Assembly: GCA_965235115.1 (NCBI GenBank)
Contig: OZ249445.1
Coordinates: 15,004,001-15,068,000, forward strand
DNA from: Laetmonice hystrix
Taxonomy: Eukaryota
DNA: 64,000 nucleotides
Direction: 5' to 3'
The notes below the pieces were generated by a model. It saw only the letters and a list, made by a program, of their open reading frames with translations. It did not search any database and was not told the origin of the DNA. Below, in pieces: positions 3,606 through 49,242 of the stretch. Positions within the stretch are counted from its first letter, which is position 1, and each line of letters starts with the position of its first letter. Both the position numbers and the translations under genes were made by a program.

Positions 3606-3821
3606 TTACATCTTTTGGAACATATCATACTTTTCCTTCATTGAAAGGTTGTGGACCCGCGGATCGTTCCTTTTCCTGCTCCTGGCCCGGTTGAGTGCCT
3701 CCTGCAATGATCCAGCGAACGGGTCGTTACCCGCCGAGGTGGGTGGAGGCGGCTGGGTGACGTTGACGGGTTCGTTCACCACGGGCTGTGGTGCCGGGAC
3801 GACAGGTGGGGCTGGAGCTTT
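3606..3821 (-). CDS. NHERF: Terminal coding exon (phase 0): Pro-rich linker plus EBP50_C-like ERM-binding tail KAPAPP...FAGSLQEALNRARSRKRNDPRVHNLSMKEKYDMFQKM*
   Basis: Acceptor ttgtccatgttacag|AAA and TAA at 3608-3606. The last 13 aa (LSMKEKYDMFQKM) align without gaps to human NHERF1 MDWSKKNELFSNL, and the preceding SLQEALNRARSRKR aligns to SLAMAKERAHQKR. Confidence 0.85.
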   Translation of the reverse strand, partial: KAPAPPVVPAPQPVVNEPVNVTQPPPPTSAGNDPFAGSLQEALNRARSRKRNDPRVHNLSMKEKYDMFQKM

Positions 3822-18800: not shown

Positions 18801-21800
18801 GAAAGCAAAATAAGACAAGCATTAATCGCAAATAACCGCCAACAGTTAAAGTTGTAGGAGAAAAGGTTTTCACAGGATACTTCCACAGGCTAAGCACACA
18901 TACTGGCAGTTTACAAAACGTTTTAGACTGCGTACAAAAATTAGCTAAAATTAGCTAAGATACACGGAAAAAATCGTTATTATAGGAAAAAGAAATTCTA
19001 TACCGACTACACTTGGACTGACCCAATGCTGATTGATAGAAATATATAAACACTATGAATGAGACTTTGTCCCCGGTGGACTACACAGGCTGAGAACCTA
19101 CAACCCAAGCGTGGGGGCTGTGTCCAGTGATGGGAACCGGCATTTCCTTCACAACACCATGTGGAATATGGAACGCACTGAACAATGTATTCCCGATCTC
19201 TGGTAAACTCCTTAGATAATTTAGTAATATATCCACAGCCTGATCAGACCCTGGCATTTAAATAAGACCATCTCTTAAATAGAAAGTGGTAATTGTAGAA
19301 CTCTGTTTTTCATGATGTTCCTGTAGAAAAGACTCCCTTGTGACACCACGACCCGGCAGTTTCTATGTGTCACCCCACCAAGTGTGAGGGTGGGGAGGGC
19401 CAAATTTGAATTGACCACCGAGGACTTCATTGTCTAGTTTCCCTAAGAATTAGATCTTCGCTAACCCCATTTCTAATACGAACAAAATATCTATCAAAAT
19501 CCAAAGCAAATCCAAATGCCTTCGCCATAACAATGGCCTTCACTACTTTGGGTTGATCCACTGACTATTGCAGGGATAACGCTCTAAAAACCAAGTACTG
19601 CTATGAAGAGGAGCACCAGACATTAAACAGGACAGGAGCTTTACACAGGCTGTTGATAGCTTTGTGTCTGCTATAGTCATCTCTGGGACAAGCCAGTGCT
19701 CCACAAAGTAATGTTATCGCAAACATAACTCTCTCCAATCTCGTTATCCTCCCCATCTGACTTCTTGATGTCAATGCTCAGGGAAAGGAGTTCCAAATAT
19801 TTCTTGTAAATGATAGATTTTTCTGAAATAAAAAAAAAAAATCTCCTGCACTGCGACAGGGTAGATAGGTAGGTTAATCAGCCTACTAAGGTCGTTTCCT
19901 ATACAGCTCTATCAAATACGCAAAAAAAAGAAAGAAACAAAAAGACGTCTGTGAATGAATCCACATCATGTGTTTTCTGTATCTTCACATCCATGTGCTT
20001 TATACACCATTTTGTTTTCATGCACTTTGAAAAGAAACCATAACGTTCATGCAGGCTGGCGTCGAGAAGGCGAGGTCGGCCGTGCCTGCCGCCATCAGCC
20101 AGGTGAGTTCAGACAGTGAAGCTTCAACCAGTCACAGAGAGATATCCCACATCAGCTACCATTTATTTTAAGGTGGTAAGTTACTACTACTGGTTATATA
20201 AAGCAGAAATATTATTTGGAGAAAAAAATTGAGCCTCCTTTTCCCTGGGAGTTATGATGTTATACCGGTTCCATGCCTAGAGGGCTGTGACGGTCTTACC
20301 TCTGGGTTCCTCGGGTGGACAGGCCAAATGGACAACACTGGGCATGGATGCATTGGGCCAAATCCCTCGCTCCACATAATAACTGTTTGCAACTTCATCC
20401 ACCACCAAGAGTCGTACTTGGTTCGGGTCGCCAGTGATCCTGTTAACCACAGTGCGATGTTCCTCTCCTTCCACGCTGACGTCATTCACCTCGATAACCC
20501 GGTCTCCCTTCATCAGCCCGGCCAGGTCGGCGGGTGTCCTCGGCTCAACCCGGCCCACAAAGTTCCCCGTCTTGGTCTTGTCGTCATGGAGACGGAACCC
20601 GTAACCTGTGTACGTCGGCCATTTACGCAGGTGACAGAGTCGGATCTGAGGTTCTTGCCCTGTTGTCTGCGGCGGTGCCTGCTCCAGAGTGTCGATGCGC
20701 TCCACGACTGATGGCAATAGTATTTACAAGTCAGAGGGTGAGGTCTTGACCGTGAACTCAATATAACCAACTCTAACTACTCCCATCTCTGTCATCATCT
20801 ACATATGAAGACAGCCCAAAGGTCATAATGTCAATCATCAACCGGCCACAAGGGATTACTGTAATACAATGTATATGTGAAGCATTCCCTTGTTCAGTTG
20901 ATATGTGAGATGCGTAACGCCTAAAGAAGATTGACATGGGTAAAACATGATAATATAAATTATTCAATTATGTTTCCAGTGGTCAGAAATATTCTTGTCG
21001 GTTTTCCTATTAATGGATCTCCATGAACATATACATGAATATACACAAATATCATTAAATTAGCTGTTTCATGGATTAGTTATTTCATGTTTGTATGGGA
21101 AAGGGCAGTTATGGTTTTGATGGTATATTTAAATTCTACAAGGCTATACCTATACTCATCTAAATAAGCAAGCTACAATTAGTGTCAATGGTCTACCTAT
21201 AAACGGAAATGGAAACTACACCCAAAAAATATTCAATTGTCCTTTGATGCTATGAACTCTTGGTGGAATACACACTACATTTGTTTATAGTTCAAACCTG
21301 TTTTTTTTCTTGCAATCATGTGTTTCATTAAGAAATTTTAACTACTGAAAATAGTGATACAGCCCCCCCCCCCCCCCCCGCTTGAGGACGCCTGGGGCGC
21401 AAACTATCTGACTTGGATACTATATGTTAGCTTTAATGTAAAACTGCTAATGATTCAGTAACTGAAGTAGACCTACATGTAATTCAGTTGACAACATGAT
21501 TCATATAAATTGACTTGTTATATGAAAGGTGACAGTCAATACCCCTAAATACTTGCGAAGTCCTCCATATGAATTTCCTTTCTTCTTATCAAAGAAATAT
21601 TATTGTGTTGAACAAGTCGCTCACTCCCTACCTGACTAACCTCGCTTTTGTCTATATTGTGTAACCTACAGTGACCTAGCTTTCTTTTATCAAAAGTCAG
21701 TGCCGTCCAGTGACGTACAATCTCTATATCATGCCATATCATTAGAAAACAACGCTTTTTCTTCAATGGCAGTTACCAAGCAGCGTTCCCAACAAAATTA

Positions 21801-24800
21801 AAAAAAAGGCAAATGAATCAAGAAGTGACCGTCAAATTTATGTTCATAAAGGAAAAAAAACTGCCTTCCAAATGACGCCTGTATATCGGCATACCCGACC
21901 ACAATCCCTTCAATCTGTGTTATGCTGTGCATATTGATACCAGATATCAAGGCAGTACCCCAATACGTGAACGTGTCCTAGAACCTGAATCTGACCGAAA
22001 TCTCATAAACCAATGAAAGGTGTGCAGACGTTGTTAAAGCTCAGCAACCTTTGGACCCCTCTACACTAGTACTCCCGTAACCTCGTGTTATCAGCCACAA
22101 ATTGACTGCCTTAATTAACAAAGCCGTCCACAAAAATCAATGGTGTTAGACCTCACCACCAGCGGATAAGTTCCTGCAACAAACACAGGGTGGCGCTACC
22201 GATCTTTGAGTGATCCATGCTCGGCGGTGACGTGGTTCAAGGTAGGCCTAAACGTTTTGCAGTGGTTCCTGAGGCGAACAGTTAGTGGCAGTGGTGCGTT
22301 TCGCTCCGTCCGCCGCCAGGGGTCAGTGCGAGGCGGTATCTACAGGTTAGATCCCATCATCCAACTATGGATAGTAGTAGTACCTCCTCCATGATCCTTA
22401 CCTTCTCGGCGGTCGGGTGACGTCAGGTGGACGATGCCGTCAAGGCGCGAGTGCGGCCAGATCTGGTCGTACAAGTACTTGTTGACGACATCAGGGGGCG
22501 CCACCAGCATCTCGACATCGTCCTGGCGTGAAGTGATGCGCTGGATGACGGCGCTGTGGTCGTCGTTACGGATGCTCATACCGTTTACCTCAAAGATTTG
22601 ATCCCCGACCTCCAGGCCAGCCGCTTCAGCTGGGTAGCCTTCCTCTATGTTTCCAACAAAGTGACCTGGCTTTCCCTGTTCTTCATGAAGATTGAAGCCA
22701 TAGCCATCACAATCGTGCCACTTCCTGACAGTTATCAGTCTCAGTGTACGCGCAGGTTCGTGTAGGCCGTTAGTCTTCACCTCCACGGCTACAGGTACAG
22801 ATTGGCATCTCATTAGATTCCCTTTCTCTCTCTTTGGGGCCTGACTGGTGTAATTCTAGACCGTAAACTTTGTCTACGGATAACCGACAATTATCAGGTT
22901 TTTTCGATACCTATTCATCTCTACCCACCACCATGTATTAGTTCCCCCGCCTGGAGGTCGTGGTCATTGAAGGACAATTGTTATGTTGTCATGGAAACTC
23001 TGTCTGTAGAATCTATCTAATGGAGATTTAAAACATATCTTTTACACCAATTATATTGTGAAATATTAGGAGCAATACCTCCTTGCAGAAGATACACCAA
23101 TCTCCGCAAACAAACCATGTATGTATTTTTCTAATATATCCTTGATAGTGTGCAATTCATGTACTATTTTTATGAATCGAGTTGGTACACAAATGGCACA
23201 ATATGAATATCATATCAGTAATTAGGACACGACCCTTTTAAACGAGTAAGATTCTGAGAGACACTCAAGGCAAACGGAGACAGGAATGTTGCGCCTATTA
23301 CCTACATATGGCAGACGTACACCAAACATGCATGAGTGATTGAGTATGAAAGACCACGCCTGTGGGTGACGAGTGACGTGACAAGTTGTTTATACTGTGG
23401 TACTATGAGATTAATAATACGGTGTAGTAGAGCCAGGAGATGGCTGCCACTGGCAGCGGTCTCGGTGTTAACACTCAAACCTACTAGCAGTAGAAGTAGG
23501 AGCAGCAGCAGGCGCGGCGGCCCAGGGTTAGTTGGAGTTTCAAACGGTGCATGTCGGCGCCGACGCTTACCTTGGACAGGAGCGTCCCGTTCTGGGCAGT
23601 CAAGCACTGTGATGTTGGGCAGGTCACAATGTGGCCACATCCCCCGGGACCTGTAGAATTGGTCGGCGTCAGTGTCCGCCACCAACAGTTCAACCTTGTT
23701 GTCCTCCGACTTGACCTTCTTGATCACCTCATAGTGGTCGTCACCGAACACGCTGTGACCGCCTACCTCAATGATCTTATCCCCGACTCGTAGGCCTGCT
23801 GCCTCGGCCGGCGAGTCGGCATCTACGTTGCCCACATAGTGCCCTGGTTTGCCCTTTTCATCGTGCAGGTTGAATCCATAGCCGTCGAAGAACTTCCACT
23901 TTCTGAGGCGACAAAGTCGCAGCATTGGGGCTTGGTCTTCCTCTACGACAGGTTTTGGGACTTCTGAAGCAACCGCTACGACAGTCGCTGCTTCCATATG
24001 GTTAGCTGTTTAAAAATCCCAGGTTGTTTTACCAAAACAATCCCGTTGAACATATATTTGTTAGCCCGATCTATCAAGTCGTCATATTCTTTTATATAAT
24101 GTAAGTACAAGTCTGCTGGGACTGGACATATGAAACTATGAGAAGAATTATTTACCTTCTTGAACAAGAACAAAAAACTCAAACTTGAGAACCTATCTCG
24201 TCTTAAACTTACAATATCTACATAACAAATTACAATAAATACTATCATGATTCGACATAAATGTACCCTAAAGCAAAGAACTTATAATCACGTCATCTCC
24301 ACACACTGCTTTAGACTAATAATGAGGAACTCGTGGTACCTCAGATATTAGTTGTAGTTAATGAAGGCGTTAACTGTTTGCCCTGAACCACTCACGGTCA
24401 TCAGTTAAACCCATGTTATCACTATAACTAAGAGAAAATCTCATTATTATATTAGACATAGCGAATGCCAGGATGGCAATCGTATGATCTGGTCATTATT
24501 GACTGAGGACTACGTTAGCACTACTATACTATGCTATAGTCAATTAAACACTAAGACTACTTCCACACGTTACAAAACGAGTACATAACACACATACCTA
24601 AACAAAGCTTCACGAAATGTTACAAGCAATTTGAAAAGTTAAAGCCATCACTACAGTAGGACAAACGGTATGCACAAAATAATTTATTGTTTGATTATAT
24701 GGGACTTAACTTCTAATACATGCTGTTTGTTACGTTTATACCTTCTACGCAAACTAGCAACTAGTAGGTTAAATTAAAACTACAAATCAAAGGTTGTTAA

Positions 24801-25215
24801 GTTCTTCCTTATTGCTTTTAAACCACAGTTTGAAGCAATAAGCAAAGGAACCCCAGGTCTTCCTAACCCACATAACGCAGATGCCATGAGGTTTTTTTGA
24901 TATACCAGATACCTTGAAACGAAATGCTCAATTTATCTATGAGCACTATGTTGAGAAACTTTGTCATCAACTTAGAAATTTTTGGCATGAACGAAAAAAA
25001 TGTGTGAAATGAAAGCAGACGAAAGTTGATGACCGAACAACTAAATGTTGTGTCCGTCTCCATGACGACAGATTCCCGGATGATGACCGCTGACGTTTTA
25101 CTACGTCTGACGTCATCCACCAATGGTGGTGGCCGGTTGGTGGTGTTAGTATTAGGTGTGTTAGTCTGACGGAGTGTGTTCAGTACGGGTTAAATCAATG
25201 GGTGGGGGTGGGGGT

Positions 25216-25246
<31 letters not shown>

Positions 25247-28200
25247 CAGTAGCCCAAGTGGAAGTCTTGTCTTAACCAAGACTTGCAGCTTACCTGAGGA
25301 CTGACGATCTGGACACTGAATGACGTGCACGTTGTCCATCTTGCTGTGCACCCAGATTGACTTGTCCTGATAGTACCGTTCCGTGTCAAGGTCCACCACT
25401 AGCAGATCGACATGGTCGCTGTGTTTCTTGATATGTTCCACCACCTGTTGGTGAGAGTCTTCCAGAGCGTTGTGGCCGTTCACCTCCACTATTTTATCGT
25501 CTTTCTTCAGACCAGCGGCGTCGGCCGGCGAGCCGGTGTCGACGGAACCGATCAGGTGGCCTGGTCTCATCTTTTCCTCATGGAGGTTAAACCCATAGCC
25601 GTCAAAGTCTGACCACTTTCTGAGGCAGCAGAGGCGTGGCCGAGGGCCTGTCTCGGGTGAAGCTGTTGGTGGCAGGCCAACAAGGACAGGACCGTTACAT
25701 ACGTCAATAAACACAAATAATCGGTCGAGTTCAATCAATGCCCTCGAGCTGAAATCCTCAAGTTAAGAATTTCATCTTTTGGTACTTAAACCACATACAA
25801 GGAATTCCCACTGCACCCCAAACAGATCAATGCAAGAATTCATTGCTATCAGAAACACTGGAAGTCCTCAAGTCGTTTACAAGACACCGCTGATATTATG
25901 TATAGTTATAACCTAGTGAAAGATTGTGGAAGAATAAAACAGCAGTGAGTGAACGTGATCGATCAATGCTGCACCAAGTACATCAATACAGAACAATCCT
26001 GAAACAGAAAGTACACACTCCACGACGACAAAATCTGGTGTTAGTATCTACCGACGATACATTATGATGGAAGGAAAAAGGTTCAAAGCAAAATGACAAA
26101 TAGGGTGGGAAAATGTAAACTTAGTGGCAAAAATACTAGGAAGCGACTGAAGACTAAAAATAGTAAAATATTAGCAATATGTCTCAGTAACAGTACATTT
26201 TTCACCGTTTGTACACGGTAAGTTAATTCTCCCTCCTTTTGAAACCACAGGTCACACTTATTGTTCTCTCACCAGCAAGTACCACTAAATCCACATTCCC
26301 TTAGAACCTGTTATTTTCAAACCTATTTGTAAGTATCTAATCCACAGAGTGACGACCCACCAGTATACGTCACGTATGACGAGTTCGTCGAGGCCTTCAT
26401 TCTAGTTAACCAATTCATATTAGAAATGGCATACTACAGTTTCCTCCTTAACGTATAATTGGACAGAGTTTCTGGTTATACTTGGTTAATTCAAAACTAA
26501 AGTAGCCTGTCGATATGTAAAGTATATCCCTTGTAGATTAAAGCATGAAGTGTCCGCGCGTGAAACCTTAACTTCTACAAACCACCAAACCCTGCCCGTG
26601 TCATACCACTAAGTAACGACAGGCGAGTGTAACAGTGAACCATAGTTTGACACATTATGACTCAGAGTTTGATACATTATAAAACAGAGTTTGAGTAATT
26701 TCAAACCATGAAAGTCTCCCACGACCTGCTACTGCCTAAGGACTGTGAGATGATCTCTCTATCAGCACAGCCATCCTGGCTGATTTCCTGGGCAGCAACC
26801 TTCATACTGTGTTAGCCTGTTGATCATGTGACCTGTTAAAGGGTGACTTCAACGGTTCTCATTAGGTAAGAGTGCTGGATGTGCATTGCTAACGTGCAGT
26901 AGTTGTCCTTCCCAGTACTGAGCCCTTGTCTGGCTTATTTGTAATATAACCAAACAGAACACTCGAGGACTCTTACCTGTTACGGCCACATAGGAGGAGT
27001 CCATTACGTCCAGCCCTGCCATTTTGCTATCAACTGTGATTGACTGGCTTTTGAAGTACTTTTCAGCCTCAGAATCGACCACCAAGAGTTGGACTTCATT
27101 GGGGCTCTGAATGATCTTTGCCACCACCTGTTTGTGGCTGTCACCGACAACGTTTTGACCGTTCACCTCAACTACTTTGTCCCACTCACGTAAACCAGCG
27201 GCATGGGCAGGAGAGCCTTGTTCTATTGCGGTAACCAAGTGGCCTGGCTCGTTCTTCCTCTCTTGGAGGTTAAAGCCATAGCCAGTGTAGTCAGGTCTCG
27301 TCTTTATGTGGTAGAGGCGGGCTCGTGGACCTGTGCCTAGTAGAAGGTATGTCGCTATTTATGGCAAAGATTTGTCAATTCAAATTTTTACCAGAGATAT
27401 GAAATTATGCAGATCTAATATTTAACCTTCCACCTACAATTATTACTTAATGACACCATTCCAGTTTTGTATTAGTTTCAGACACGTAGAACAAGTACTG
27501 TGAGATGTACTCATTAAGAACCAAATGGTGCATAAATGGATTGGAGCTGATGTGAAAGAAATATCAAGATGTCAACTATCCTCCAAAATTGTGAGCAAAG
27601 GACACCAAATTTACATCATTGGAATGCCAAAATGGGATACTCATGAAGATATTTTCTTCACACTTGTCTTTTTAAGTCGTTTGAATTGCAGTTTCTTTTT
27701 TTTGTATTTGCAATTTTAAAAAGGTCGTCAGCCAGAAGAAACCAATCTTTTTTCTCTTTTCCTAAGATGCTATTGTGTTTTGGTTTCTATACTCTATCTT
27801 GTTCTCGGGTACTGTGAATATGATGGTGCATTCCTTCAAATTCAGCACACTTTGGCTGCATCTGAAATGTGTGCTTTATAAACAAATAAAGTGCTGTGTG
27901 CAAGGGTGAGGATGATACTATAGGTGCAAGGTGACACAGACTCAATCTACAGTACATTTAATTTTCATTTTTAATTCAATGTTTTGATTGTTTTTTTTTT
28001 AGTAAATCCTAATTATCTGAGCGTGATTAATCTGTGATTGCCAGCACACTGAAGCACAAAAACCGTACTTGAAAGAACACAATAATGGTTCACACTGCCT
28101 CACTTGACTGTAGACCATTGAACCAACACCTTAATGTTAGCATGTGATTTCAATGTTCCAGTGGCAATAATTAACGTGGAATGCTAGTAGTTCCCAATAC

Positions 28201-40200: not shown

Positions 40201-43200
40201 CTGCTCTCTCCTTCTAAATAAACTCGACAAAAACATATATCATTTTGTCAACCTTTTCTCCTTAACAACCTACCATATATTTCTCTCATTCTATTCTATT
40301 TCTCAGGCAATTTGTTCTGGTTCCAGTGCAGACAATCATCCCTCAACGTGGATCGAGTGTTATCAGAGGTCGAGTTTTTCATGAAAATATATGTCGTTAA
40401 CAAACACATGTCATAGTCACATAGCATTGACTCTGCGCTTGGCCTAAATAATTTCACAACATATTCCTACAACGATATACATATAACTTGCCATGAATAC
40501 AAAATGTATCTACAAGTGCAGTATGTTGAAGAAGTACTTGAAGAATGTGAATTGTTTATTGCCCAATTTTTGTTTAATTCGCGTTCAGTCAGCTTAGCAT
40601 TTCCTGCTGCATTACATTTGGTTGATTCTAACCACAACCTGAGGAGATGAAAACAGACTGTGTGTCACTTCAACAATATCCATCCCTCCATTCCACACAC
40701 GTACCTGACTCATGTATACGTAATCTTCAACCCTCACTTGTCTTACTCTAACATATGCAGCATGGATTCATAATTTATAGTCCTCATTTAATTCCTTCAT
40801 CATTAGGTCGGTGGTCACGATGGCCCGAGGGTTCGTGAACTCCCACGTAGGCCCGTCACATGTCGTGTCACCGGCATGTGGTGACACCTGAAAGATATCA
40901 ACCAAATGTCAACAGGAAATCCTTCCTGCTTTTCCCACTCAGGTGGGATGGCACTCCTGCAAAGACACCTGGTTTTTCTTGAGGCTTGGCTGACCGCGGT
41001 CCTCCCAGCTCACCATCTGGGAAACACTCAGCATTGCATAAAGCGACAAGTTCGGGAAGAGATTCAGGTCACGTTCTAGGCATCCATCTGAAATACAAAC
41101 AAAACATCATGCCCTGTCACCTCCAGGGGAGGCTGGCCTGGCGTCCTCCGGCCTCCATTCTCACTGATCTTCTACTGATGAATCGTCATGACAACCACCA
41201 CGGAGCAGCAACAACAATCAAATCTCATCTAGCGATGTCTTGATGGGTCTTCATCGTAAGGGGATTTCTTGATTGTCCGGTAGGAGACTTAGGTCAAATC
41301 TAGACGTCTACTGGGTATTATTCTACATCTTAGCTGAAACACCCAACTAAATTTTCCACCATAGCAGTAACAGGAAGAGAACGAGGACCTTCCACAGTAC
41401 AGGGACAGACAGGTATTCATAGATGTCCACTGGTTGGAGAGATACACCGTGCTGCCTGTCAGTACGCCAGAGCCAGGGAGTGGGTACCATATGGTGGGTA
41501 TGATCCACAACCAAGGGGAATCATTAGATGACCCGTTGGGTAGGGGTGGGTGGGAAGGAGGAGGTCCTATTCTAGAAGACGGTGGATTCCTTGCCGGCAG
41601 GGTGGTAACTACTGCCTTACCTTTGCTGGGCTTGCGGTCAGGGCATGTAATGACCTCCACTTCCGACAGCCCACTATGCACGGTCTTGCCCTTGTTATTG
41701 TAGTACATCTCCGTCTCGTTATCTACGACTAACATAGAGACTTGACTAGGGCTCCCCTTGATCCTTTTCACCACGTCTGAATGTTTGTCATTCAGTGTGT
41801 TGTCCCCGTTCACCTCCACGATCCTGTCCCCTTTCTTCAATCCTGCCGCCGCCGCCGGGGAGTCGGCCTCAACCACACCCAGGAAATTCCCTGGTTTGTT
41901 CTTTTCGGCGTGGAGGTTGAACCCGTAGCCCTGGAAGTCTGGCCATTTCTTGATGTGACAGAGGCGCGGGCGTGGGCCTTTATCTTCTACAACAGCTGCT
42001 GTTGTTACGGCTGCGGCTACTGCCGTTTCTGTGACTACGTCAGCTGTTTCTGTTTTTGCTGTTGTTGCTGCGGTTGCTAGAAACGTATGAGTACATGCAA
42101 ATAGCAATCCGTAAGGTCACCTTTTAAAAGGCCTACGTCTATTTCATTTTTCTGCGAATAGCCTACAATGGAGAAGTAATGTTTTGAACTTCCTCTAACC
42201 CACTGGATACTTATCGTCATAATACCAAGACGAACCACTACTGCCGTCAACACTTAAATCATCTGATGTCTTTGCTATAACATCAGACAAAAGCTGACTT
42301 CACTCTGTAAATCATCTCCTACAGTATTGAGTAATTCCGCAGCATGTCAAAGCTGGAAACAATCTCTTACAGTATTGAGTAATTCCGCAGCATGTCAAAG
42401 CTGGAAACAATCTCTTACAGTATTGAGTAATTCCGCAGCATGTCAAAGCTGGAAACAAAGCTAACGCAGACAATAGGTATGAGATTTTTGTGATCGTCAT
42501 CCCATTGCCTCGAATCTGCTTACGTCATAGGTGTCGGAGTGGAGGGATGGGGATAAGGTAGTAGGTTATAGAAGGGAGAGTGTTGGGATGACCTCATGCT
42601 CACCTCCAGTCGCGGACATAGCGGGATCCTGGTCAGGACAAACCATCACCTTCACGTTGGCCATGTCGCCATGAACTTTCACTCCGAGCTGCCGGTAGTA
42701 GGCGTCCGTCTCCTCGTCTATCACAAGTAAGCTCACCTTTCCCAGCTCGGCCGTCACTTTGCCAACAACCACGCTGTGGCTGTCCTCAAACACGTTACTA
42801 CCGTTCACCTCCACCACTATGTCGTCTTTCTTCACGCCCGTTACGTCGGCGGGGGAGCCACTGTCTACGGTCCCGATCACGTGACTGTTCCTGGTTTTGT
42901 CAGCGTGCAGATTGAAACCGTAACCTTTGCCGTCCGACCATTTCTTGAGGTGGCACAGACGGGGGGAAGGAGCGTCTCCGGCGACGGTTGGGACGGCGGA
43001 CACGGCCATGACGGCGGCGGCACTCGGGCCGGCCAGACCGCTCACATTCACGTCTGGTTCTGGCTTCGACTCTGCTTCTGGTTCTTCTTTAGCGTTAACT
43101 TCATCTTCTGCTTCAACTTCGGTAGCCACTGCAAGTGCTGCCACAGCGACCACCTCCTCAGGCTCGGGTTCATACAGGTCCTTCTCGATTCCGGGAAGTT

Positions 43201-46200
43201 TCTCTGGAATTGGTGGAGGTTGCTCCTCTGTGAGGCAAACATGAGCCACGCAATGTGAAGAGCTCATCCTTTAAAACACATTCTATGTCCCACTCGTTTT
43301 TCTTCACTGGTCACTACATTGTTAGAGTAATGATCATGACCTTTGAAAGGCACTCTACAGCCAATCTCCTCTCTGAATTTACGTTTTAAGACCTTACTTT
43401 ATCAAGACATTGGGATGTTACTATTCGTGATTTTCACTGAAATCGAAAAGTTTCATCGATTATAATTTCTTTACTGACATTCAGTCATATTGCTAAGAGA
43501 CTTGACTTGCGTGATATTTTAACAATACACAAACTACTGGCTAAGTAAAACGGACTTATAACACTAAATGTTTGTTAAAAATTACGTTTTGATTCACTTC
43601 TTACCAGGTTTGTAGGGTTCAGGTGAGGCTTACCATGAGTATGACTAATTCAGAAATCAACTTACCTCTTATTTACCATAATAAACGTTTCAAGTTTAGA
43701 AATAGAATTATCTCATAAAAGGGGATTCCTGAAAACTAGAACTAGAGGACTAGATACCTATACAACCTATCCAACCTAAAAATAACGGAGGGAACATCTA
43801 ACTACCAGTACCGCACTAAGGGAATCATCACGGGTTTCGAAATGGAGGTTTACGTAGCACACAGCGAGTTTTAAGCCAGGGTTTCCACTTATACACAGGA
43901 GAGATTATGCCTTAACAAGTACTAAATTAACACTAATTAAGGATAGGTACTTTAAGAACTGGACAGTGGTTTCCTCATTCATAATCTGCCACAAATTATT
44001 ACCCCCTAAAGCGGAAGTGTAGAACCCCCAACGCTGTTTTCTGAATTAAATATTCTACTGTTTATAGCAGTCATCTCAGACCTATGCAGCCACCGGCGCA
44101 GAAACAAAACGGTATATTTCACTCGGTGCTGTGTGGACAAGACAGTGAATGCACTGACCCGTGTAGTAATCGACAGCCTGTGTGTGGTGGACATGGCTCA
44201 GCGAACAATAATCATATGGATTCTGGCTCCTTACCTGGCACCCAGATGTGATTATCGATCAGTGGTGCACCGATCGGAATGCCGGCCAGGGTGTGGGTGT
44301 GGGTGTGGGTGTGGGTGCGGGGGGGGGGGTAGTGGATGGTATGGAGCCATCGAACGGTTGGCCACACCTACAGTGTCTCTCCGCCTGTTAACTGCTGCCA
44401 CTTAGCGCTACAATATCACACCGTTATAACGGGAATACGTGATGTACCCATACAATGTGACACTTGTGTTAACTCGCCCCATAACACCATGACCACTCAG
44501 CTTTAAGTGAGCGCTACTCGGAACAAACGCTTCCTACGTTAGCAGGCACAACTGCTCAATTACTCCACCCGTCTGGGGTTGGTATGGTTTGGATCACGCA
44601 AACTTCTCTCCAAGAAGGGCTGCCTGCCTTACAATCCGCACCCTTCCCTCGCCCAGCTCTGTGTGCTGTCAGGCATGATTGCCAGCCCCGGCGTGACGAC
44701 CCACTGACGTCGACAAGATCTGTCCTCAATTCACGAAAATTACTACAAGGTCTTCTCCGATCACTGGAAACAACTATAGCGTTCTCCACCAATTTGGGTA
44801 GCAATAACTGCAATTTATCCCAACTGAGAGCTAACCAAATTCTCAACACGATTCAATGATTCCCCCCGGTATTCTATAATTTAATATAATTTCTATACAA
44901 AAAACCTCTTGGTGCCTCTTATTTCAGCCTTATCTTTTTCACATTTACTAACATTGGGTCCGCTAGCACACTGACTTATTCGTGCATTCCAAGATATACT
45001 AATATTATGTTATTTACGTCAAACTAAAACCTTCTCCGCCGACTGCATGCTAGTCTGACTGCTTTCTTTCTGCCTACTGTGAGCAGTCCCAGAAACGGAG
45101 CAGAAATAGTAACCAGGAGGACCTGGACTGAGAATTCTGAAAGTGTTTATCTTTGCCTCCAGTTCTCTATCGTCGTACCGATACTCCCCTCATCTTCAGC
45201 CAGAGCCCGATTCCTGATATCCAGTCCCTCTTCCCACTCCCCAACCCTATTATTGGACCTCGCCCCTGCCTTCTTCAGATATCAACCAAATGAAGCCCCT
45301 GCCTTCGCAATCCTGATACAACTAGCCTCGCCTTCCGACGTCAGGACCTCTAGCATTGCCGGTTGCCACCAATGAGGTCAGACCTCTCACTCTATCACAC
45401 CTTTACACGCAGTCACTGAGAGCCCACTAATTACATGGACATTCATTAAGACCTACTTGTCCCAAGATCAGGTCATATGACTGCCCAACCATTGTTATGA
45501 CAATCTGTGACAGCCTCCAAACTTCCTGGTTTTCTCAACACACATAGTACAGTAACCAATCATGTAGTAAGTGCCAGTAAACTTCGCTTTACATAGGGCC
45601 TTTCCCTGCCAGTAAACTTCGCTTTACATAGGGCCTTTCCCTGCCAGTAAACTTCGCTTTACATAGGGCCTTTCCCTTCCAGTAAACTTCGCTTTACATA
45701 GGGCCTTTCCCTGCCAGTAAACTTCGCTTTACATAGGGCCTTTCCCTGCCAGTAAACTTCGCTTCACATAGGGCCTTTCCCTGCCAGTAAACTTCGCTTT
45801 ACATAGGGCCTTTCCCTGCCAGTAAACTTCGCTTTACATAGGCCCTTTCCCTCTCACCTGTAAACTCGAGTCATTATTCAAATCAGGAACTAGTAAACAA
45901 CGATAGAGTGATCTCGGGTATTTTTTAGGATGACCTTGCTGGGCCGTATTGTGGAGCGTGTCTTCAAGGAATGTCACGTTTAACGCAAGATCTTTGCCCA
46001 TCCCATCCTTCGCCGTTAATTTCCACATCACTCTGACAAGGTATGGGTACCTCACCTCCACTGGCAACTAACTTTACAATCATACTTTACAACTTTACAA
46101 CTTACAACTTTACAATAGATTTTTACTATGCCTTATCTGAAAATGCTGTACGGTCAGGCAAGAAATAAAATTAAAAGTTACTTTGGCAACACAAACCAAG

Positions 46201-49200
46201 AAGTCCGTGACCTCTTTCAAGGTGTCCCTTACCTCCTATCACACATGAATTACGACACGGCAAGTGGCACAGAGCACACATGTACTGTCACTAGAAGAAA
46301 TGCCCTCTGGATATCCCATAAAGAACGCTTAGGACTACGTTGTACACCGCTACAAATAATTTCCTGTGAGAAACCCCAGGACAGCCAGTTCAGTTAGGTC
46401 GGCCCTACACACACACCCTCCCACCCTGTACGAGCTCAAGCGTTGAGAAAATATGGGACTTCATCCTGTAAGTCTTCCAAGGTTACCTATGTATCCCTTT
46501 TAGGTTTATGGGTGATACTGTTATAGTCAATCTGGTCATTAGGTCGCTATGAAGAATGAAACTAAGATTCTGTCATTCTTGATAGGTGACCTTGAATTGA
46601 GGTTTCACATGACACCTTCCAAACAGACTCTCCTCACTGAAGGCCGAGCTAGTAGTGCTTGGTTCCAAAGGACGGTAGAGCTGTAAATGTAGGATACATG
46701 TATATAACAACGCCGGAGAGACATCCTTCCTCCTTCCCACCACACCCAACAGTGACGTCATTCGTCATTGAATATGCTTCACCTAACAATGGGGGTTTGT
46801 TCTCACACTCATTACGATCGGAAAACTGGGTCTTCCTACCCTTCACTGGTCTCTCTACAATGTGCTGTTCTCACACTCATTACGATCGGAAAACTGGGTC
46901 TTCCTACCCTTCACTGTTCTCTCTACAATGTGCTGTTCTCACACTCATTACGATGGGAAAACTGGGTCTTCCTACCCTTCACTGTTCTCTCTACAATGTG
47001 CTGTTCTCACACTCATTACGATCGGAAAACTGGGTCTTCCTACCCTTCACTGTTCTCACTACAATGTGGCTATACAATTAGATATCTAGACGGCAAAATA
47101 TTTCTAGGTTACCACATTTTCTTTTCATTTCAATAACTGGCACATCATCGCGCCGAGATAAAGACACAACAAGAAAGCATAACATTATTGTGAAAATGTT
47201 CATGTCAAGGTTATTTCAGCCATTCATCTTTAGAAACGGTAGGGGAATACCTCTGCTATCGTCAATTAACGATGCAACCCGAGTATATCATCATACACAA
47301 GCAATAAGAAATCTATTTTTCAGTGCGACAGGTAACATAATTAGTTTTAAAAATGGAAATTATTCAAATGTCTTCATCTGAAATAGGCACGTTTTTATCA
47401 CAGATACCAGATTGTAAGAAACAAGAATAAATTTAGAACGTTAGCCAACTGGTAAAATCGTATAAATTTACACACAAAAATTGTGAGCAACTGACACCCC
47501 CCGCCCCGCCCACTCTGCCACTATGAAACCGAATAATTATGACATAGGCCTATATCGCAAGGCTGAAGCGACCGGCAGAATTCTGCAAATATCCATCTCC
47601 CAAAGTAATTGATGTCTACCTACCGGGGGTAGTCCATTCTACTTAAAAAAGAGTTACTTAAAAGCTTGTACATACATGTACTGTAGCACTATAAACTAAT
47701 TTTAGTGGCCGGTTAGCAATGTGCCACACAGCAGGAGATTAAGGCAGCCAAGCTTCAACATTATAGCTTTCCCATGACTGGTCTTTCAATAACAGTTAGA
47801 TTCCATCAATTGGCTCATTTACGGTAATTGACTATATGCCCCATTACTATTATATCGGAAACGCATTAACAAAGAGCGCGCAGTCAACCATTCCAAACGT
47901 TCCCCTAAATGGTGATATCCCTTATATCAAATCTGGGTAACATCCAGTAATATGAGTGGTCATACCCATTGGAAGCTGAAATAACTCTAAATATGTGAAC
48001 TTTTTACGTAAATTTGTGTTTTATTCTGACTACCGGTACTAAGATTACGTCAGAAACATGTCCTGGAGACTAACCAGGTAGTACTACCGTCATGTACACG
48101 CAATTACAACGGGGATCACCCCTCCCCCCCCCCTTACAAAAAACTGGTGACGGCAAGATACTGAATATTTCTCCAGCTTTTCCTGAAAATAAAACTGTCC
48201 AAAAATGGACCCTTACTTAGTCGGTTATGCTAGTATCGAAGCATTCTTATAAAGACATGAGCATGCTTAAGGTAATTTGAATGGGAAGCGAACCAACCAT
48301 ACCCAACTTACCCCGGTACTTAGGCCGCTATAATTATTGCTATAAATCACAGTTATTATTAGTTCTATATTAGGTTAGAAACCACCGAGTGTCAATCTTA
48401 ACCAACTACAAGAAGGTTACTTACACAAAGCGGACAAACACTGACACCGACATAACACTGTCTTCAACAACTTTTGACACTTACAAACTTTAGGTGTCCT
48501 TTTTGTTACAATGACCTTTTGCTGCTGACTTTAAACATTTAAATTTAATCAGGCAGTTTGAGAAAAGAAATCAGATCTCATCGTGTTACAATGTGGTCTC
48601 AGATACAGTGTTTTAACTTGAGCTCTGTCCCGCCCGGGCGACTTTCTTTGTAATTTCCTTGTGATTTTGCGCCATTTAATTGATACCCATCCCTGTTTCT
48701 GACAATGAGTTCCACACTTTAAAATTAGAAAGTGATGTCAAACTCGCAAGGAATTCACAAGCAAAATCGGCAGCCAGCGACCACGGACCTTAGGGATCCC
48801 TCCACCTTCCCGACCATGAGGCCGGCCCAGGTGTTCCGACCCTGGATTCGACCTCTGACCTTTGACCCTGGCTCACCTTCGGCGTGTCTGTCTGGAGTTT
48901 GCCTTGTAATAACCTGCGGCATGTCGCCGCGTACGACGGTACCGCGCTGCGTGTAGAAGTCGTCTGCCTCGCGGTCCAGTACGAGCATGGTGACCTGGTC
49001 GGTGTGCGCCTTGATCCTCGACACCACCTGTTGGTGATTCTCGCCGCCAATGTGCACATCGTTAACCTCTACAATCCGGTCACCCTCCCGGAGACCTGCC
49101 GTCGAGGCCGGAGAGTTGTCGTCCACCTTGCCGATGTACTGGCCCGGCTTGCCCTTCTCGGCGTGCAGGTTGAAACCGTAACCTTGGAAATCTGGCCACA

Positions 49201-49242
49201 GCTTCATCACACATCGCCGAGGGTGCGGCTCCTCTTCAGGCT
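3606..49242 (-). CDS. NHERF: Giant NHERF/EBP50 (SLC9A3R)-family scaffold gene: 16 PDZ domains, long repetitive low-complexity region, C-terminal ERM-binding motif; about 27 exons, about 4,000 aa, 5' end not resolved
   Basis: 16 minus-strand ORF segments carry the NHERF-type PDZ signature PRLC..[21 protein letters not shown]..AGL...D.IVEVNG......H..VV..I. The terminal exon matches the spacing of the NHERF FERM-binding motif. All exons have AG/GT boundaries that join in frame. Confidence 0.88.
5927..9289 (-). CDS. Giant repetitive exon (3363 nt, 1121 aa, phase 0-0) rich in E/V/R/S/Y with ETVRYE and SSYEIRSS repeats
   Basis: Uninterrupted 1143-codon ORF 5885..9316. Strong acceptor tcgtgtttccttcag|CCC at 9289. 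The 3' end is either a modest donor TAT|gtatgg at 5927 or read-through to TAG at 5885. Confidence 0.8.
10458..10547 (-). CDS. Phase 0-0 cassette exon, MNGDAYIESNNVEVTKEAMPVNEIIQVEPE
   Basis: atctttgtgtatcag|ATG...GAG|gtgaga; 90 nt; in frame with neighbours. Confidence 0.75.
10831..10908 (-). CDS. Phase 0-0 cassette exon, MNGMEKEAEVIETGAAISVVEVTAEE
   Basis: tatgtctcacaacag|ATG...GAG|gtgaga; 78 nt; E/V-rich like neighbours; not shown in the ORF track. Confidence 0.75.
11935..12180 (-). CDS. Phase 0-0 exon, Thr/Val-rich (AGVELVRNGATD...TTATTTTTTTTA...TEFVSYQ)
   Basis: gtgattgtacag|GCT...CAG|gtgagg; 246 nt within ORF 11866..12192. Confidence 0.75.
12328..12381 (-). CDS. Phase 0-0 small exon, IKRRGSEKFETITTTGAE
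   Basis: cttgattcccgtcag|ATC...GAG|gtgagc; 54 nt; contains an RRGS basophilic (PKA-type) kinase motif. Confidence 0.7.
12704..12766 (-). CDS. Phase 0-0 small exon, IVRQVDMVVEESVETVTSQDE
   Basis: gtacgtactcgcag|ATC...GAG|gtgagc; 63 nt. Confidence 0.7.
12918..12980 (-). CDS. Phase 0-0 small exon, VAEYTKRSHASVVREFVSNKE (tandem NAGNAG acceptor could add a Gln)
   Basis: acgtttgcagcag|GTC...GAG|gtgaga; 63 nt, open in phase 0. Confidence 0.6.
14099..14236 (-). CDS. Phase 0-0 exon, VVEVAETNGHTADVEAV...EPSPEPVRQLTPEPDRQPSPVPE
   Basis: tttttaccgcatacag|GTG...GAG|gtgaga; 138 nt within ORF 13952..14419. Confidence 0.78.
16013..16636 (-). CDS. Phase 0-0 exon, 208 aa, Tyr/Asp/Arg/Gly-rich low-complexity region
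   Basis: gtatgtatttccag|CGA...TTG|gtaagc; within ORF 15899..16648. Confidence 0.7.
17134..17220. repeat. 3 x 29-bp tandem repeat, each copy carrying the 12-bp palindrome GACAGCGCTGTC
   Basis: Units start at 17134, 17163 and 17192 (ctgacagcgctgtc...ttaacaggcg). Confidence 0.9.
17574..17620 (-). CDS. 47-nt phase 1-0 exon, (V)SQTNGQVTTAVEAAQ, linking the PDZ block to the tail block
   Basis: Strong acceptor ctattttgttctacag|TT and donor CAG|gtaggg; the phase change needed to join PDZ16 (phase 1) to exon 16636 (phase 0). Confidence 0.75.
20300..20707 (-). CDS. PDZ exon 16 (RLCHLRKWPTYTGYGFRLHDDK...)
   Basis: ttgccatcag|TC...G|gtaaga; 408 nt, phase 1-1. Confidence 0.9.
22402..22788 (-). CDS. PDZ exon 15 ([26 protein letters not shown]...)
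   Basis: ctgtacctgtag|CC...G|gtaagg; 387 nt, phase 1-1. Confidence 0.88.
23571..24005 (-). CDS. PDZ exon 14 ([26 protein letters not shown]...)
   Basis: gatttttaaacag|CT...G|gtaagc; 435 nt, phase 1-1. Confidence 0.9.
25217..25252 (+). repeat. (CAG)9-TAG-CAG-TAG trinucleotide microsatellite just downstream (in transcript direction) of the PDZ13 donor
   Basis: Read directly; encodes Leu12 on the minus strand in frame with PDZ13. Confidence 0.9.
25294..25662 (-). CDS. PDZ exon 13 ([22 protein letters not shown]...)
   Basis: ctgccaccaacag|CT...G|gtaagc; 369 nt, phase 1-1. Confidence 0.9.
26977..27336 (-). CDS. PDZ exon 12 (RLYHIKTRPDYTGYGFNLQERK...), near-identical to exon 11
   Basis: ccttctactag|GC...G|gtaaga; 360 nt, phase 1-1. 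Confidence 0.88.
28245..28604 (-). CDS. PDZ exon 11, near-identical to exon 12
   Basis: cccttctactag|GC...G|gtaaga; 360 nt, phase 1-1. Confidence 0.88.
29032..29164. mobile_element. 133-bp fold-back, MITE-like element
   Basis: Perfect 24-bp terminal inverted repeat CCAGGACCCAGTTCCTAAAAACTT (29032-29055 / 29141-29164) plus an inner 16-bp inverted repeat TTAACGTTTCTGATTG (29072-29087 / 29108-29123); no clean TSD. Confidence 0.65.
29545..29988 (-). CDS. PDZ exon 10 (RICNLALRPDFDGYGFEVQEQ...)
   Basis: ggtcctgttcag|CC (alternative phase-1 acceptor at 29976)...G|gtaagt; 444 nt. Confidence 0.88.
31205..31645 (-). CDS. PDZ exon 9 (RLCSLRVWPKVSGYGFDLVEEK...)
   Basis: Donor G|gtaagc is clear; acceptor is either cttcttctggcgaag| (31645) or ggaccag| (31621), both phase 1. 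Confidence 0.87.
31975..32484 (-). CDS. PDZ exon 8 with 8-aa VVPEVEVP repeat linker (RLCCLRVWPQVSGYGFDLFEEE...)
   Basis: cttcttctggccataatgtag|TG...G|gtaagg; 510 nt, phase 1-1. Confidence 0.87.
32737..33207 (-). CDS. PDZ exon 7 (RLCCLKTWPDVSGYGFDLRQEK...; alphaB His replaced by Leu)
   Basis: ttgttctccgtggtcag|AG (a closer phase-1 acceptor ccag|AT is also possible)...G|gtaaga. Confidence 0.87.
33667..34356 (-). CDS. PDZ exon 6 with 17-aa QIPVVVTANQIAVREDD repeat linker (RLCVMKKMPNDLSYGFDLLEEE...)
   Basis: gatcctactccag|CA...G|gtaagg; 690 nt, phase 1-1; a shorter acceptor (caagcag|CT) could exclude the repeat. Confidence 0.82.
35149..35532 (-). CDS. PDZ exon 5 (RLFILYKWSDFVGYGFDLYHER...)
   Basis: ttttgatgtcag|GA...G|gtaagc; 384 nt, phase 1-1. 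Confidence 0.9.
36473..36832 (-). CDS. PDZ exon 4 ([21 protein letters not shown]...)
   Basis: cattgcttctag|CA...G|gtaaga; 360 nt, phase 1-1. Confidence 0.9.
39249..39321. repeat. 3 x 23-bp tandem repeat gcacggctctgatggcacccaca
   Basis: Three identical units read directly. Confidence 0.9.
41621..42076 (-). CDS. PDZ exon 3 ([26 protein letters not shown]...), canonical NHERF type
   Basis: catacgtttctag|CA...G|gtaagg; 456 nt, phase 1-1. Confidence 0.92.
42314..42458. repeat. 3 x 48-bp minisatellite
   Basis: acagtattgagtaattccgcagcatgtcaaagctggaaac recurs at 42321, 42369 and 42417. Confidence 0.9.
42604..43227 (-). CDS. PDZ exon 2 with acidic/Ala-rich linker ([22 protein letters not shown]...)
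   Basis: gtttgcctcacag|AG...G|gtgagc; 624 nt, phase 1-1. Confidence 0.9.
45572..45851. repeat. 8 x 35-bp minisatellite tgccagtaaacttcgctttacatagggcctttccc
   Basis: Head-to-tail units with single substitutions and no spacers. Confidence 0.95.
46798..47068. repeat. 4 x 68-bp minisatellite
   Basis: tctcacactcattacgat recurs at 46801, 46869, 46937 and 47005. Confidence 0.93.
48877..49242 (-). CDS. PDZ exon 1 ([33 protein letters not shown]...), the most canonical NHERF PDZ
   Basis: ggttgctatgttacag|AG...G|gtgagc; 366 nt, phase 1-1. Confidence 0.92.

What the first reader, a model, noticed from the sequence alone, without database searches (positions are those of the whole stretch)
20300..49242. 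A NHERF with 16 tandem PDZ domains
Seen: 16 intact NHERF-type PDZ exons, none with stops or frameshifts, upstream of a single ERM-binding tail. Established: NHERF1/2 have 2 PDZ domains plus an ERM tail; PDZK1/NHERF4 have 4 and lack the classic tail; even MPDZ has 13, of a different lineage. Inference: a lineage-specific mega-scaffold able to cluster many apical transporters or receptors on one actin anchor, e.g. in ion-transporting, brush-border or biomineralising epithelia. I know of no described equivalent but could not search.
Basis: partly seen in the sequence, partly recalled or inferred. Interest (0 to 1): 0.9.

Follow-up and report, generated by a model that had tools for sequence, protein, structure and literature searches.

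The report
NHERF scaffold gene with 17 PDZ exons
This marine worm's only NHERF gene, which encodes a protein that tethers membrane transporters to the cell skeleton, holds 17 intact, expressed copies of its docking domain where studied animals have one to four, and RNA shows the copies are spliced in series with whole blocks sometimes skipped.

Summary
Sixteen intact NHERF-type PDZ exons lie on the minus strand between 49242 and 20300. All pass Pfam's PDZ threshold, and all are symmetric phase 1-1 exons.

Three corrections:
- A 17th PDZ exon carrying the start codon lies about 22 kb upstream, outside the window.
- The single tail exon is at 3606-3821, outside the stated range.
- The exons are not simply all joined together.

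An RNA run shows serial splicing (PDZ5-6, 7-8, 8-9, 9-10). It also shows block skipping (PDZ5 to 10, PDZ10 to 13).

The genome holds no other NHERF-type PDZ exon and no other tail, so this is the sole NHERF locus. There are no decayed copies, and dN/dS is 0.19-0.35.

A related genome shares the array: its ATG-exon, PDZ4 and PDZ5 orthologues are 72-83% identical. It has fewer copies in the same span.

The expansion is independent of the one in Priapulus caudatus, whose unstudied RefSeq model has 10 PDZ domains plus a tail. No protein among 1.84 billion representatives has more than 10 such domains, and I found no paper on an expanded NHERF.

Still unproven: that all 17 domains and the tail ever sit in one molecule, and that the tail binds ERM proteins. 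The scan's other notes on this locus are first-stage only.

The parts
48877..49242 (-). PDZ exon 1 of the window (second PDZ of the gene; PDZ1-type duplicate)
   Evidence: Pfam PDZ. Phase-1 donor AAG|GTGAGC at 48877. Predicted acceptor TTACag at 49242. 68% identical to Patella NHE-RF1 PDZ1. Groups with canonical PDZ1 at 99/93.
42604..43227 (-). PDZ exon 2 with long acidic linker
   Evidence: Pfam PDZ. Donor GAG|GTGAGC. Acceptor predicted only.
41621..42076 (-). PDZ exon 3
   Evidence: Pfam PDZ. Donor AAG|GTAAGG. Acceptor predicted only.
36473..36832 (-). PDZ exon 4
   Evidence: Pfam PDZ. Donor CAG|GTAAGA. 83% identical orthologous ORF P0310 in a related genome.
35149..35532 (-). PDZ exon 5
   Evidence: Donor at 35149 confirmed by two RNA joints, to 34356 and to 29988. 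72% orthologue P0311 in the relative.
33667..34356 (-). PDZ exon 6 with 17-aa Pro/Val-rich tandem repeats in its linker
   Evidence: Acceptor 34356 confirmed by RNA joint. Donor GAG|GTAAGG. 51-nt repeat.
32737..33207 (-). PDZ exon 7 (the only copy with Leu in place of the alphaB1 His)
   Evidence: Donor 32737 confirmed by RNA joint to 32484. Residues.
31975..32484 (-). PDZ exon 8 with 8-aa EVPV repeats
   Evidence: Acceptor 32484 and donor 31975 both confirmed by RNA joints. 24-nt repeat.
31205..31645 (-). PDZ exon 9
   Evidence: Acceptor near 31645 and donor 31205 confirmed by RNA joints.
29545..29988 (-). PDZ exon 10
   Evidence: Acceptor 29988 confirmed by two RNA joints. An RNA contig runs on from donor 29545 into the start of exon 13.
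28245..28604 (-). PDZ exon 11 (cassette; skipped in one RNA contig)
   Evidence: Pfam PDZ. 97% identical to exon 12 in the exon only. The RNA run holds 23% of the words of 26977-28604.
26977..27336 (-). PDZ exon 12 (cassette; skipped in one RNA contig)
   Evidence: As for exon 11. dN/dS against exon 11 = 0.19.
25294..25662 (-). PDZ exon 13
   Evidence: Acceptor 25662 confirmed: the 29-nt loose end of the RNA contig beyond donor 29545 matches 25634-25662 exactly.
23571..24005 (-). PDZ exon 14
   Evidence: Pfam PDZ. Donor AAG|GTAAGC. Acceptor predicted only.
22402..22788 (-). PDZ exon 15
   Evidence: Pfam PDZ. Donor AAG|GTAAGG. Acceptor predicted only.
20300..20707 (-). PDZ exon 16
   Evidence: Pfam PDZ. 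Donor GAG|GTAAGA. Acceptor predicted only.
17574..17620 (-). Predicted 47-nt exon that would shift the frame from phase 1 to phase 0
   Evidence: Strong acceptor ttgttctacag| and donor CAG|gtaggg. Open in the required frame. No RNA evidence.
3606..3821 (-). Terminal exon with the NHERF C-terminal tail and stop codon
   Evidence: Ends ...RKRNDPRVHNLSMKEKYDMFQKM*. Aligns to the C-termini of more than 20 NHERF-family proteins, including Patella NHE-RF1 (E 1e-6). Only copy in the genome. Best acceptor at 3821 is phase 0.

Best explanation
This is the animal's single NHERF (EBP50/SLC9A3R-family) gene. Its PDZ-coding exon has been copied in tandem until the locus holds 17 one-domain exons. An ATG exon with a PDZ1-type domain lies just outside the window, and 16 more exons lie inside it. 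One C-terminal NHERF tail exon lies downstream. Each exon encodes linker + PDZ + a short C-terminal extension and is symmetric (phase 1-1), so any subset can be joined without breaking the frame. Shown: the exons are transcribed and spliced head-to-tail, and whole blocks (PDZ6-9, PDZ11-12) are alternatively skipped. All copies keep the carboxylate-binding loop, 15 of the 16 window copies keep the class-I His, and the copies are under purifying selection. Inferred: the products are apical scaffolds of variable, very high valency (up to 17 docking sites). They would bind C-terminal motifs of transporters and receptors and, through the tail, attach to ERM proteins and cortical actin. Splicing would set how many and which docking sites each cell type deploys.
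For: Domains and type. Uniform phase-1 donors and exon lengths divisible by 3. One locus only: the whole genome has 17 NHERF-type PDZ exons, all here on one strand, one ATG-PDZ exon with a phase-1 donor, one tail, and no ORF over 145 aa in the window part of the 22-kb first intron. RNA: run X4 covers exons only and carries GT..AG joints that are absent from the DNA runs: 35149>34356, 32737>32484, 31975>31645, 31205>29988, 35149>29988 and 29545>25662. X4 also holds PDZ11/12-type words. Selection: no decayed copies; dN/dS 0.19 (PDZ11/12) and 0.35 (PDZ8/9); 8 synonymous versus 7 non-synonymous haplotype differences. Conservation: a related genome has orthologues of the ATG exon, PDZ4 and PDZ5 (72-83%) and 8 PDZ ORFs in 12.5 kb with matching spacing. 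Precedent for long isoforms: Priapulus RefSeq isoform with 10 PDZ plus tail, and a Logan transcript with 6-7 PDZ plus tail on one 3.1-kb contig. Tail homology. ERM binding by NHERF tails in C. elegans: PMC8860247.
Against: No single RNA molecule spanning many exons was seen. Logan contigs are 180-475 nt, so co-inclusion of all 17 is not shown. Junctions were examined only in 29541-35540. ATG exon to PDZ1, PDZ1-5, PDZ13-16, PDZ16 to the 47-nt exon, and the route to the tail are predictions. The tail exon's best acceptor is phase 0 while the PDZ exons end in phase 1, so a phase-shifting exon (predicted 17574-17620) or the weaker acceptor at 3817 is needed. Large minus-strand ORFs (15899-16648; 5885-9316, 1143 aa) lie between the array and the tail, and their relation to the transcript is untested. 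Pfam EBP50_C does not hit the tail, although it also misses annotated mollusc NHE-RF1. The RNA run is from the same sample and study as the assembly, and only one sample was seen.
Confidence: 0.78

Rival explanations
1. Cassette-choice reading: the exons are mainly alternatives. Typical products would be ordinary-sized NHERFs carrying a few PDZ domains chosen from the array, and a 16-17-domain protein would be rare or absent.
For: Two block-skipping joints were seen in a 6-kb sample of the gene: PDZ5>10, and PDZ10>13 as the contig's continuation. All exons are symmetric, so any skip is in frame. RefSeq lists several isoforms for the Priapulus and mollusc genes.
Against: Four consecutive junctions (5>6, 7>8, 8>9, 9>10) exist in the same RNA, so at least PDZ5-10 can be joined in series. 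Exons differ greatly in linker length (360-690 nt), unlike mutually exclusive exon sets. Transcripts with 6-10 PDZ in one molecule exist in other species.
Confidence: 0.3
2. The PDZ array and the tail are not in the same protein. Array transcripts would end elsewhere, for example in the repeat-rich exons at 16.6-5.9 kb, and the tail would be reached only by short isoforms or not at all.
For: The tail acceptor is phase 0 while the PDZ donors are phase 1. 16.5 kb with large ORFs lies in between. Another species' 5-PDZ transcript (P0004) ends in an acidic repeat region with no tail.
Against: It is the only tail and the only NHERF locus in the genome, on the same strand. A well-formed 47-nt exon would convert phase 1 to phase 0. 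Priapulus and Logan890 proteins join 6-10 PDZ directly to a homologous tail.
Confidence: 0.15
3. Several separate neighbouring genes, or dead duplicated exons in an intron.
For: None beyond the absence of full-length RNA.
Against: There is only one exon with a start codon, and the others begin mid-linker with acceptors. RNA joints link neighbouring exons. There are no stops or frameshifts, no decayed copies, and dN/dS is below 0.4.
Confidence: 0.03
4. Assembly artefact: falsely expanded tandem copies.
For: PDZ11 and PDZ12 are 97% identical.
Against: All other copies are only 29-68% identical. The PDZ11/12 identity stops about 20-25 nt beyond the exon and the introns are unrelated. DNA contigs of runs X1 and X3 tile nearly all of 30.0-35.5 kb without structural disagreement. 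A related genome has the same array layout.
Confidence: 0.02

Closest known systems
NHERF1/EBP50 and NHERF2/E3KARP (vertebrates), NRFL-1 (C. elegans), mollusc NHE-RF1
   Same: Same PDZ subtype (102-114 bits to NHERF1/2 structures). The ATG exon starts directly with PDZ1, as in canonical NHERF, and is 70% identical to Patella PDZ1. Homologous C-terminal tail. Single gene in an invertebrate genome.
   Different: These have two PDZ domains, and Drosophila Sip1 has one (PMC8860247). Here there are 17 PDZ exons, with cassette-style block skipping.
Priapulus caudatus LOC106807044 isoform X5 (XP_014664751.1), an uncharacterised RefSeq prediction
   Same: NHERF-type PDZ1, then many PDZ copies (10 in all), then a homologous tail ...KKKKDPRMSAQLDAKTKSDMLNKL.
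   Different: Independent expansion: its PDZ2-10 form their own clade (97/80) that excludes every window domain. It has 10 domains, not 17. Its linker to the tail is about 70 aa. No publication was found.
PDZK1/NHERF3 and PDZD3/NHERF4
   Same: NHERF-family scaffolds with more than two PDZ domains (four).
   Different: Weaker PDZ similarity (74-86 and 65 bits). By established knowledge they lack the classic ERM-binding tail. In the tree the two 4-PDZ proteins that I labelled PDZK1-like from their length and domain count do not group with the window's sub-arrays.
MPDZ/MUPP1 (13 PDZ), PATJ/InaD-like (10 PDZ), and choanoflagellate multi-PDZ proteins (17-20)
   Same: Very high PDZ counts in one polypeptide.
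   Different: A different PDZ lineage: about 15 bits per domain against this profile, and InaD-like scores 52 bits. By established knowledge they have an L27 N-terminus and no ERM tail, and their domains are not one-per-symmetric-exon copies of each other.

Membership tests
NHERF (EBP50/SLC9A3R) family | PDZ domains of the NHERF subtype | tested here: met
   The profile of the 16 domains ranks NHERF1/2 first (102-114 bits), then NHERF3 and NHERF4, then a gap to about 53 bits or less for other single-domain PDZ chains. The nearest full proteins are annotated NHE-RF1/2 of molluscs.
NHERF (EBP50/SLC9A3R) family | Intact peptide-binding pocket (GYGF loop, alphaB1 His of class-I PDZ) | tested here: met
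   GYGF in 15 of 16 and SYGF in one. His in 15 of 16, with Leu in PDZ7.
NHERF (EBP50/SLC9A3R) family | N-terminal PDZ1 orthologous to canonical PDZ1 | tested here: met
   Window PDZ1 groups with mollusc and Priapulus PDZ1 (99/93). The out-of-window ATG exon is 70% identical to Patella PDZ1.
NHERF (EBP50/SLC9A3R) family | C-terminal ERM-binding tail present in the gene | tested here: met
   3609-3770 aligns to the C-termini of more than 20 NHERF proteins and is the only copy in the genome. Pfam EBP50_C is silent, but it also misses annotated mollusc NHE-RF1, so that result is uninformative.
NHERF (EBP50/SLC9A3R) family | Tail and PDZ domains joined in one mRNA | not tested
Only splice-site and phase logic is available.
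NHERF (EBP50/SLC9A3R) family | Tail binds the FERM domain of ERM proteins | not testable with these tools
   No contiguous ERM sequence of this animal could be handed to the complex predictor. This is inferred from NRFL-1 (PMC8860247).
MPDZ/PATJ multi-PDZ family | PDZ domains of the MPDZ/InaD lineage | tested here: not met
   InaD-like scores 52 bits against more than 100 for NHERF1/2. Library proteins with 13-20 PDZ average about 15 bits per domain.

The most novel reading that the evidence does not exclude
The locus is a combinatorial scaffold generator. Seventeen symmetric, individually diverged PDZ exons, some organised in co-skipped blocks such as PDZ6-9 with their own Pro/Val-rich spacers, would let splicing set both the number and the ligand repertoire of docking sites per molecule, cell type by cell type. 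The longest isoform would be a protein of about 2,500 or more residues with 17 PDZ domains on one ERM anchor. That would be a way of building apical transporter assemblies not known in any model animal.
Probability: 0.35. Interest if true: 0.75.

Novelty: new variant of a known kind. Interest (0 to 1): 0.62.

Why it matters
In studied animals NHERF proteins carry one, two or four PDZ domains, and their valency is thought to set how transporters, receptors and the ERM-actin cortex are assembled at apical membranes. A natural NHERF with 17 conserved, expressed docking modules and block-wise alternative splicing is an extreme test case of how scaffold valency evolves. It also shows that the 'one PDZ per symmetric exon' layout, which was also seen in an unrelated species' contig, predisposes this gene to repeated independent expansion: here, in priapulids, and possibly in rotifers and tunicates. 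It gives a concrete gene for studying ion-transporting or absorptive epithelia in marine worms.

Tried and rejected
- **No RNA run on record.** X4 turned out to be RNA only when its contigs were laid on the window.
- **No proteins from this species' own RNA contigs.** The searches returned none, so the junctions ATG exon>PDZ1 and PDZ16>downstream could not be read that way.
- **Relative's contig (ERZ26222911).** A search with PDZ14 found no orthologue on it, so the distal half of the relative's array and its total count remain unknown.
- **Priapulus gene structure.** It could not be fetched.
- **Weak BLAST hints of decayed PDZ relics.** The hints were in ORFs 16516-16253 and 10628-10392. The HMM scan did not support them (E above 1), so I rejected them.
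- **Pfam on the downstream ORFs.** It gave only spurious repeat hits.
- **Rfam.** It found nothing in the window.
- **Origin of PDZ2-16.** The tree cannot resolve whether they all descend from canonical PDZ2, because that region is an unresolved polytomy.
- **Not run.** No complex prediction (no usable ERM sequence) and no structure prediction (PDZ assignment is unambiguous).
Full report
**What is there.** The feature is on the minus strand. A six-frame scan finds 16 open reading stretches between 49261 and 20280, each with a G/S-Y-G-F loop. Aligned, they share a 119-position core at 29-68% pairwise identity, apart from PDZ11/PDZ12 at 97%. All 16 pass Pfam's PDZ threshold. A profile built from them ranks solved NHERF1 and NHERF2 PDZ domains first (102-114 bits), then NHERF3/PDZK1 (74-86), then NHERF4 (65). 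Other single-domain PDZ chains score about 53 bits or less. The closest full-length proteins are annotated NHE-RF1/2 of molluscs, up to 67-68% identical over PDZ1. Fifteen copies have GYGF and one has SYGF. Fifteen keep the class-I alphaB1 His, and PDZ7 has Leu.

**Exon architecture.** Each domain, with its N-terminal linker and a conserved C-terminal extension (...YY..xxIxVHGxMxxxxVxxCP...), sits in one exon. Each exon ends in a phase-1 donor, G|GTAAG in 14 exons and G|GTGAG in two. Each has at least one compatible phase-1 acceptor. With the RNA-confirmed or best acceptors, every exon length is a multiple of 3, from 360 to 690 nt. Any subset can therefore be spliced in frame.

**A 17th exon and the ends of the gene.** A search of the whole 627-Mb assembly with the domain profile finds 17 matches. 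Sixteen are in the window. One is at C11:15075399-15075746 (-), about 7.4 kb beyond the window's right edge. That exon opens with ATG (MSSAVPNDAPAPRLCHLKKWPDFSGYGFNLHAEKG...), like canonical NHERFs. It is 70% identical to Patella PDZ1 and ends in a phase-1 donor CAG|GTGGGT. The part of the roughly 22-kb gap that lies in the window has no ORF over 145 aa.

At the other end, one ORF at 3606-3821 (-) ends ...RKRNDPRVHNLSMKEKYDMFQKM*. It aligns to the C-termini of more than 20 NHERF-family proteins (Patella ...KKMDPRNQKVDFKQKYELFQKM, Priapulus ...KKKDPRMSAQLDAKTKSDMLNKL). It is the only such sequence in the genome. Pfam's EBP50_C model does not hit it. That model recognises a vertebrate-type NHERF but also misses the annotated mollusc proteins, so its silence says nothing. 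One start exon, 17 PDZ exons and one tail, all on one strand and with nothing similar elsewhere, make this the animal's sole NHERF locus.

**RNA evidence.** No run is labelled RNA. When run X4 was laid on 29541-35540, its contigs covered only the exons. They carried joints with GT..AG ends on the minus strand that are absent from the DNA runs X1 and X3.

| Junction | Coordinates (donor > acceptor) | Kind |
|---|---|---|
| PDZ5>6 | 35149>34356 | consecutive |
| PDZ7>8 | 32737>32484 | consecutive |
| PDZ8>9 | 31975>~31645 | consecutive |
| PDZ9>10 | 31205>29988 | consecutive |
| PDZ5>10 | 35149>29988 | skips PDZ6-9 |
| PDZ10>13 | 29545>25662 | skips PDZ11 and PDZ12 |

For PDZ8>9, the 14 'between' letters are the start of exon 9. 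For PDZ10>13, the contig ending at the PDZ10 donor continues with 29 nt that match 25634-25662 exactly, which is the start of exon 13. X4 nevertheless holds 23% of the words of 26977-28604, about one exon's worth, so PDZ11/12-type sequence is expressed too.

The exons are thus real, expressed and joined in series, and whole blocks are alternatively skipped. The skipped block PDZ6-9 is also a well-supported clade in the domain tree, (6,(7,(8,9))), at 100/94. It carries Pro/Val-rich tandem repeats in its linkers, which lie inside RNA-confirmed exons.

The limits of this evidence are clear. Contigs are only 180-475 nt. Only one sample was seen, the same one as the assembly. Only 6 kb was examined. 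Co-inclusion of all exons in one molecule, and every junction outside PDZ5-13, remain predictions.

**Between the array and the tail.** The tail's best acceptor (TTACag|AAAGC at 3821) is phase 0, whereas the PDZ donors are phase 1. A 47-nt exon proposed in an earlier first-stage note (17574-17620) has an excellent acceptor and donor, is open in the right frame, and would make that shift. Large minus-strand ORFs lie in between, including 15899-16648 and a 1143-aa Tyr-Glu-repeat ORF at 5885-9316 with a phase-0 acceptor at 9289. I could not test whether they belong to the transcript. In the Priapulus and Logan890 proteins the last PDZ is followed by a short linker and then the tail.

**Real, and maintained by selection.** The copies are old and diverged. 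The 97% identity of PDZ11/12 ends about 20-25 nt outside the exon, and their introns do not align. This indicates exon-limited gene conversion, not a mis-assembly. Independent DNA contigs tile nearly all of 30.0-35.5 kb without structural disagreement. A sensitive HMM scan finds 17 strong copies and no decayed ones. dN/dS is 0.19 for PDZ11/12 and 0.35 for PDZ8/9. Haplotype differences inside exons split 8 synonymous to 7 non-synonymous, against roughly a 1:3.3 ratio of sites.

**Relatives.**
- *Close relative.* A genome on an ENA contig of 653 kb holds orthologues of the ATG exon (80%), PDZ4 (83%, including the residues that flank the acceptor) and PDZ5 (72%). It has eight PDZ ORFs on one strand within 12.5 kb, spaced as in the window. 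It has six where the window has nine in the same downstream span, which fits the view that the youngest window pairs (8/9, 11/12) are later additions.
- *Another species.* A further contig has three tandem PDZ exons, each with the same G|GTAAG phase-1 donor. The exon layout that permits expansion is therefore widespread.

**How unusual.** Among 1.84 billion representative proteins, the profile's best hit is Priapulus caudatus XP_014664751.1, 'uncharacterized protein LOC106807044 isoform X5', with 10 NHERF-type PDZ domains and a homologous tail. Next comes a Logan transcript-derived protein with 6-7 PDZ plus tail. After that come weaker multi-PDZ proteins of rotifers, Oikopleura and Pristionchus. 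No protein has more than 10 strong domains. Proteins with 13-20 stretches are choanoflagellate or environmental multi-PDZ proteins at about 15 bits per domain. In the domain tree, Priapulus PDZ2-10 plus the Logan890 domains form a clade (97/80) that excludes all window domains, so the expansions are independent.

Full-text searches found no paper on an expanded NHERF. The characterised family members have one PDZ (Sip1), two (NHERF1/2, NRFL-1) or four. The NRFL-1 tail is required for ERM-1 binding and apical localisation (PMC8860247).

**Verdict.** This is a real, expressed, selectively maintained NHERF gene with 17 PDZ exons and cassette-like block skipping. It is the largest NHERF-type array I could find, and it arose in this lineage. 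It is a new variant of a known kind. It is not categorically new, because 5-10-domain NHERF-like proteins already sit undescribed in databases. The 'one mega-scaffold on one actin anchor' reading is plausible but unproven, and the evidence favours a family of isoforms of variable valency. The organism is called a marine worm in earlier notes of this scan (unchecked). Earlier notes on this locus (the 47-nt exon and the 1,121-aa exon) are first-stage only.

Noticed in passing
window 5885-9316 (-): A single 1143-aa open frame of Tyr-Glu-rich repeats (VETVRYEIRERSPDG..., SSYEIRSS...) lies between PDZ16 and the tail exon, with a good phase-0 acceptor at 9289. I tested neither its expression nor its membership of the NHERF transcript. 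An earlier first-stage note (s1-353748) also flagged it.
   Followed up: partly
window 26977-28604 (-): The PDZ11 and PDZ12 exons are 97% identical, but the identity stops about 20-25 nt outside each exon and the introns are unalignable. This points to exon-limited gene conversion between neighbouring cassette exons.
   Followed up: yes
window 34070-34347 and 32323-32470 (-): Coding tandem repeats sit inside the linkers of PDZ6 (51 nt x 5.5, ANQIPVVVT-type) and PDZ8 (24 nt x 6.2, EVEVPVVH-type). Both lie within RNA-confirmed exons. These Pro/Val-rich spacers are confined to the co-skipped block PDZ6-9.
   Followed up: partly
window 31628-31630: The RNA contig lacks 3 nt (in frame) in the PDZ9 linker relative to the assembly. 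This is probably an allele.
   Followed up: no
window 15899-16648 (-), 13952-14419 (-), 11866-12192 (-), 10314-10718 (-): Further long minus-strand open frames lie between the PDZ array and the tail. They have no Pfam match and low-complexity composition. They may be linker exons of the same gene.
   Followed up: partly
window 45572-45852, 46798-47068, 42314-42458; L012 3353-3925: Intronic satellites with 35-nt, 68-nt and 48-nt units at 97-98% identity, plus a repeat that reads as a 190-aa HGYIIYRYIHHGQ frame in the first intron.
   Followed up: no
L011 (Logan ERR14368245 contig, 3297 nt): Another species expresses a 5-PDZ NHERF-like transcript (P0004). Its C-terminus is a long acidic repeat region with no ERM-type tail. 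Some of its domains group with window PDZ10 and PDZ14-16 in the tree.
   Followed up: partly
L015 9923-14391 (+) (ENA ERZ25069296 ctg20970): Three tandem NHERF-type PDZ exons within 4.5 kb in a further species, two of them near-duplicates. Each ends in a G|GTAAG phase-1 donor.
   Followed up: partly
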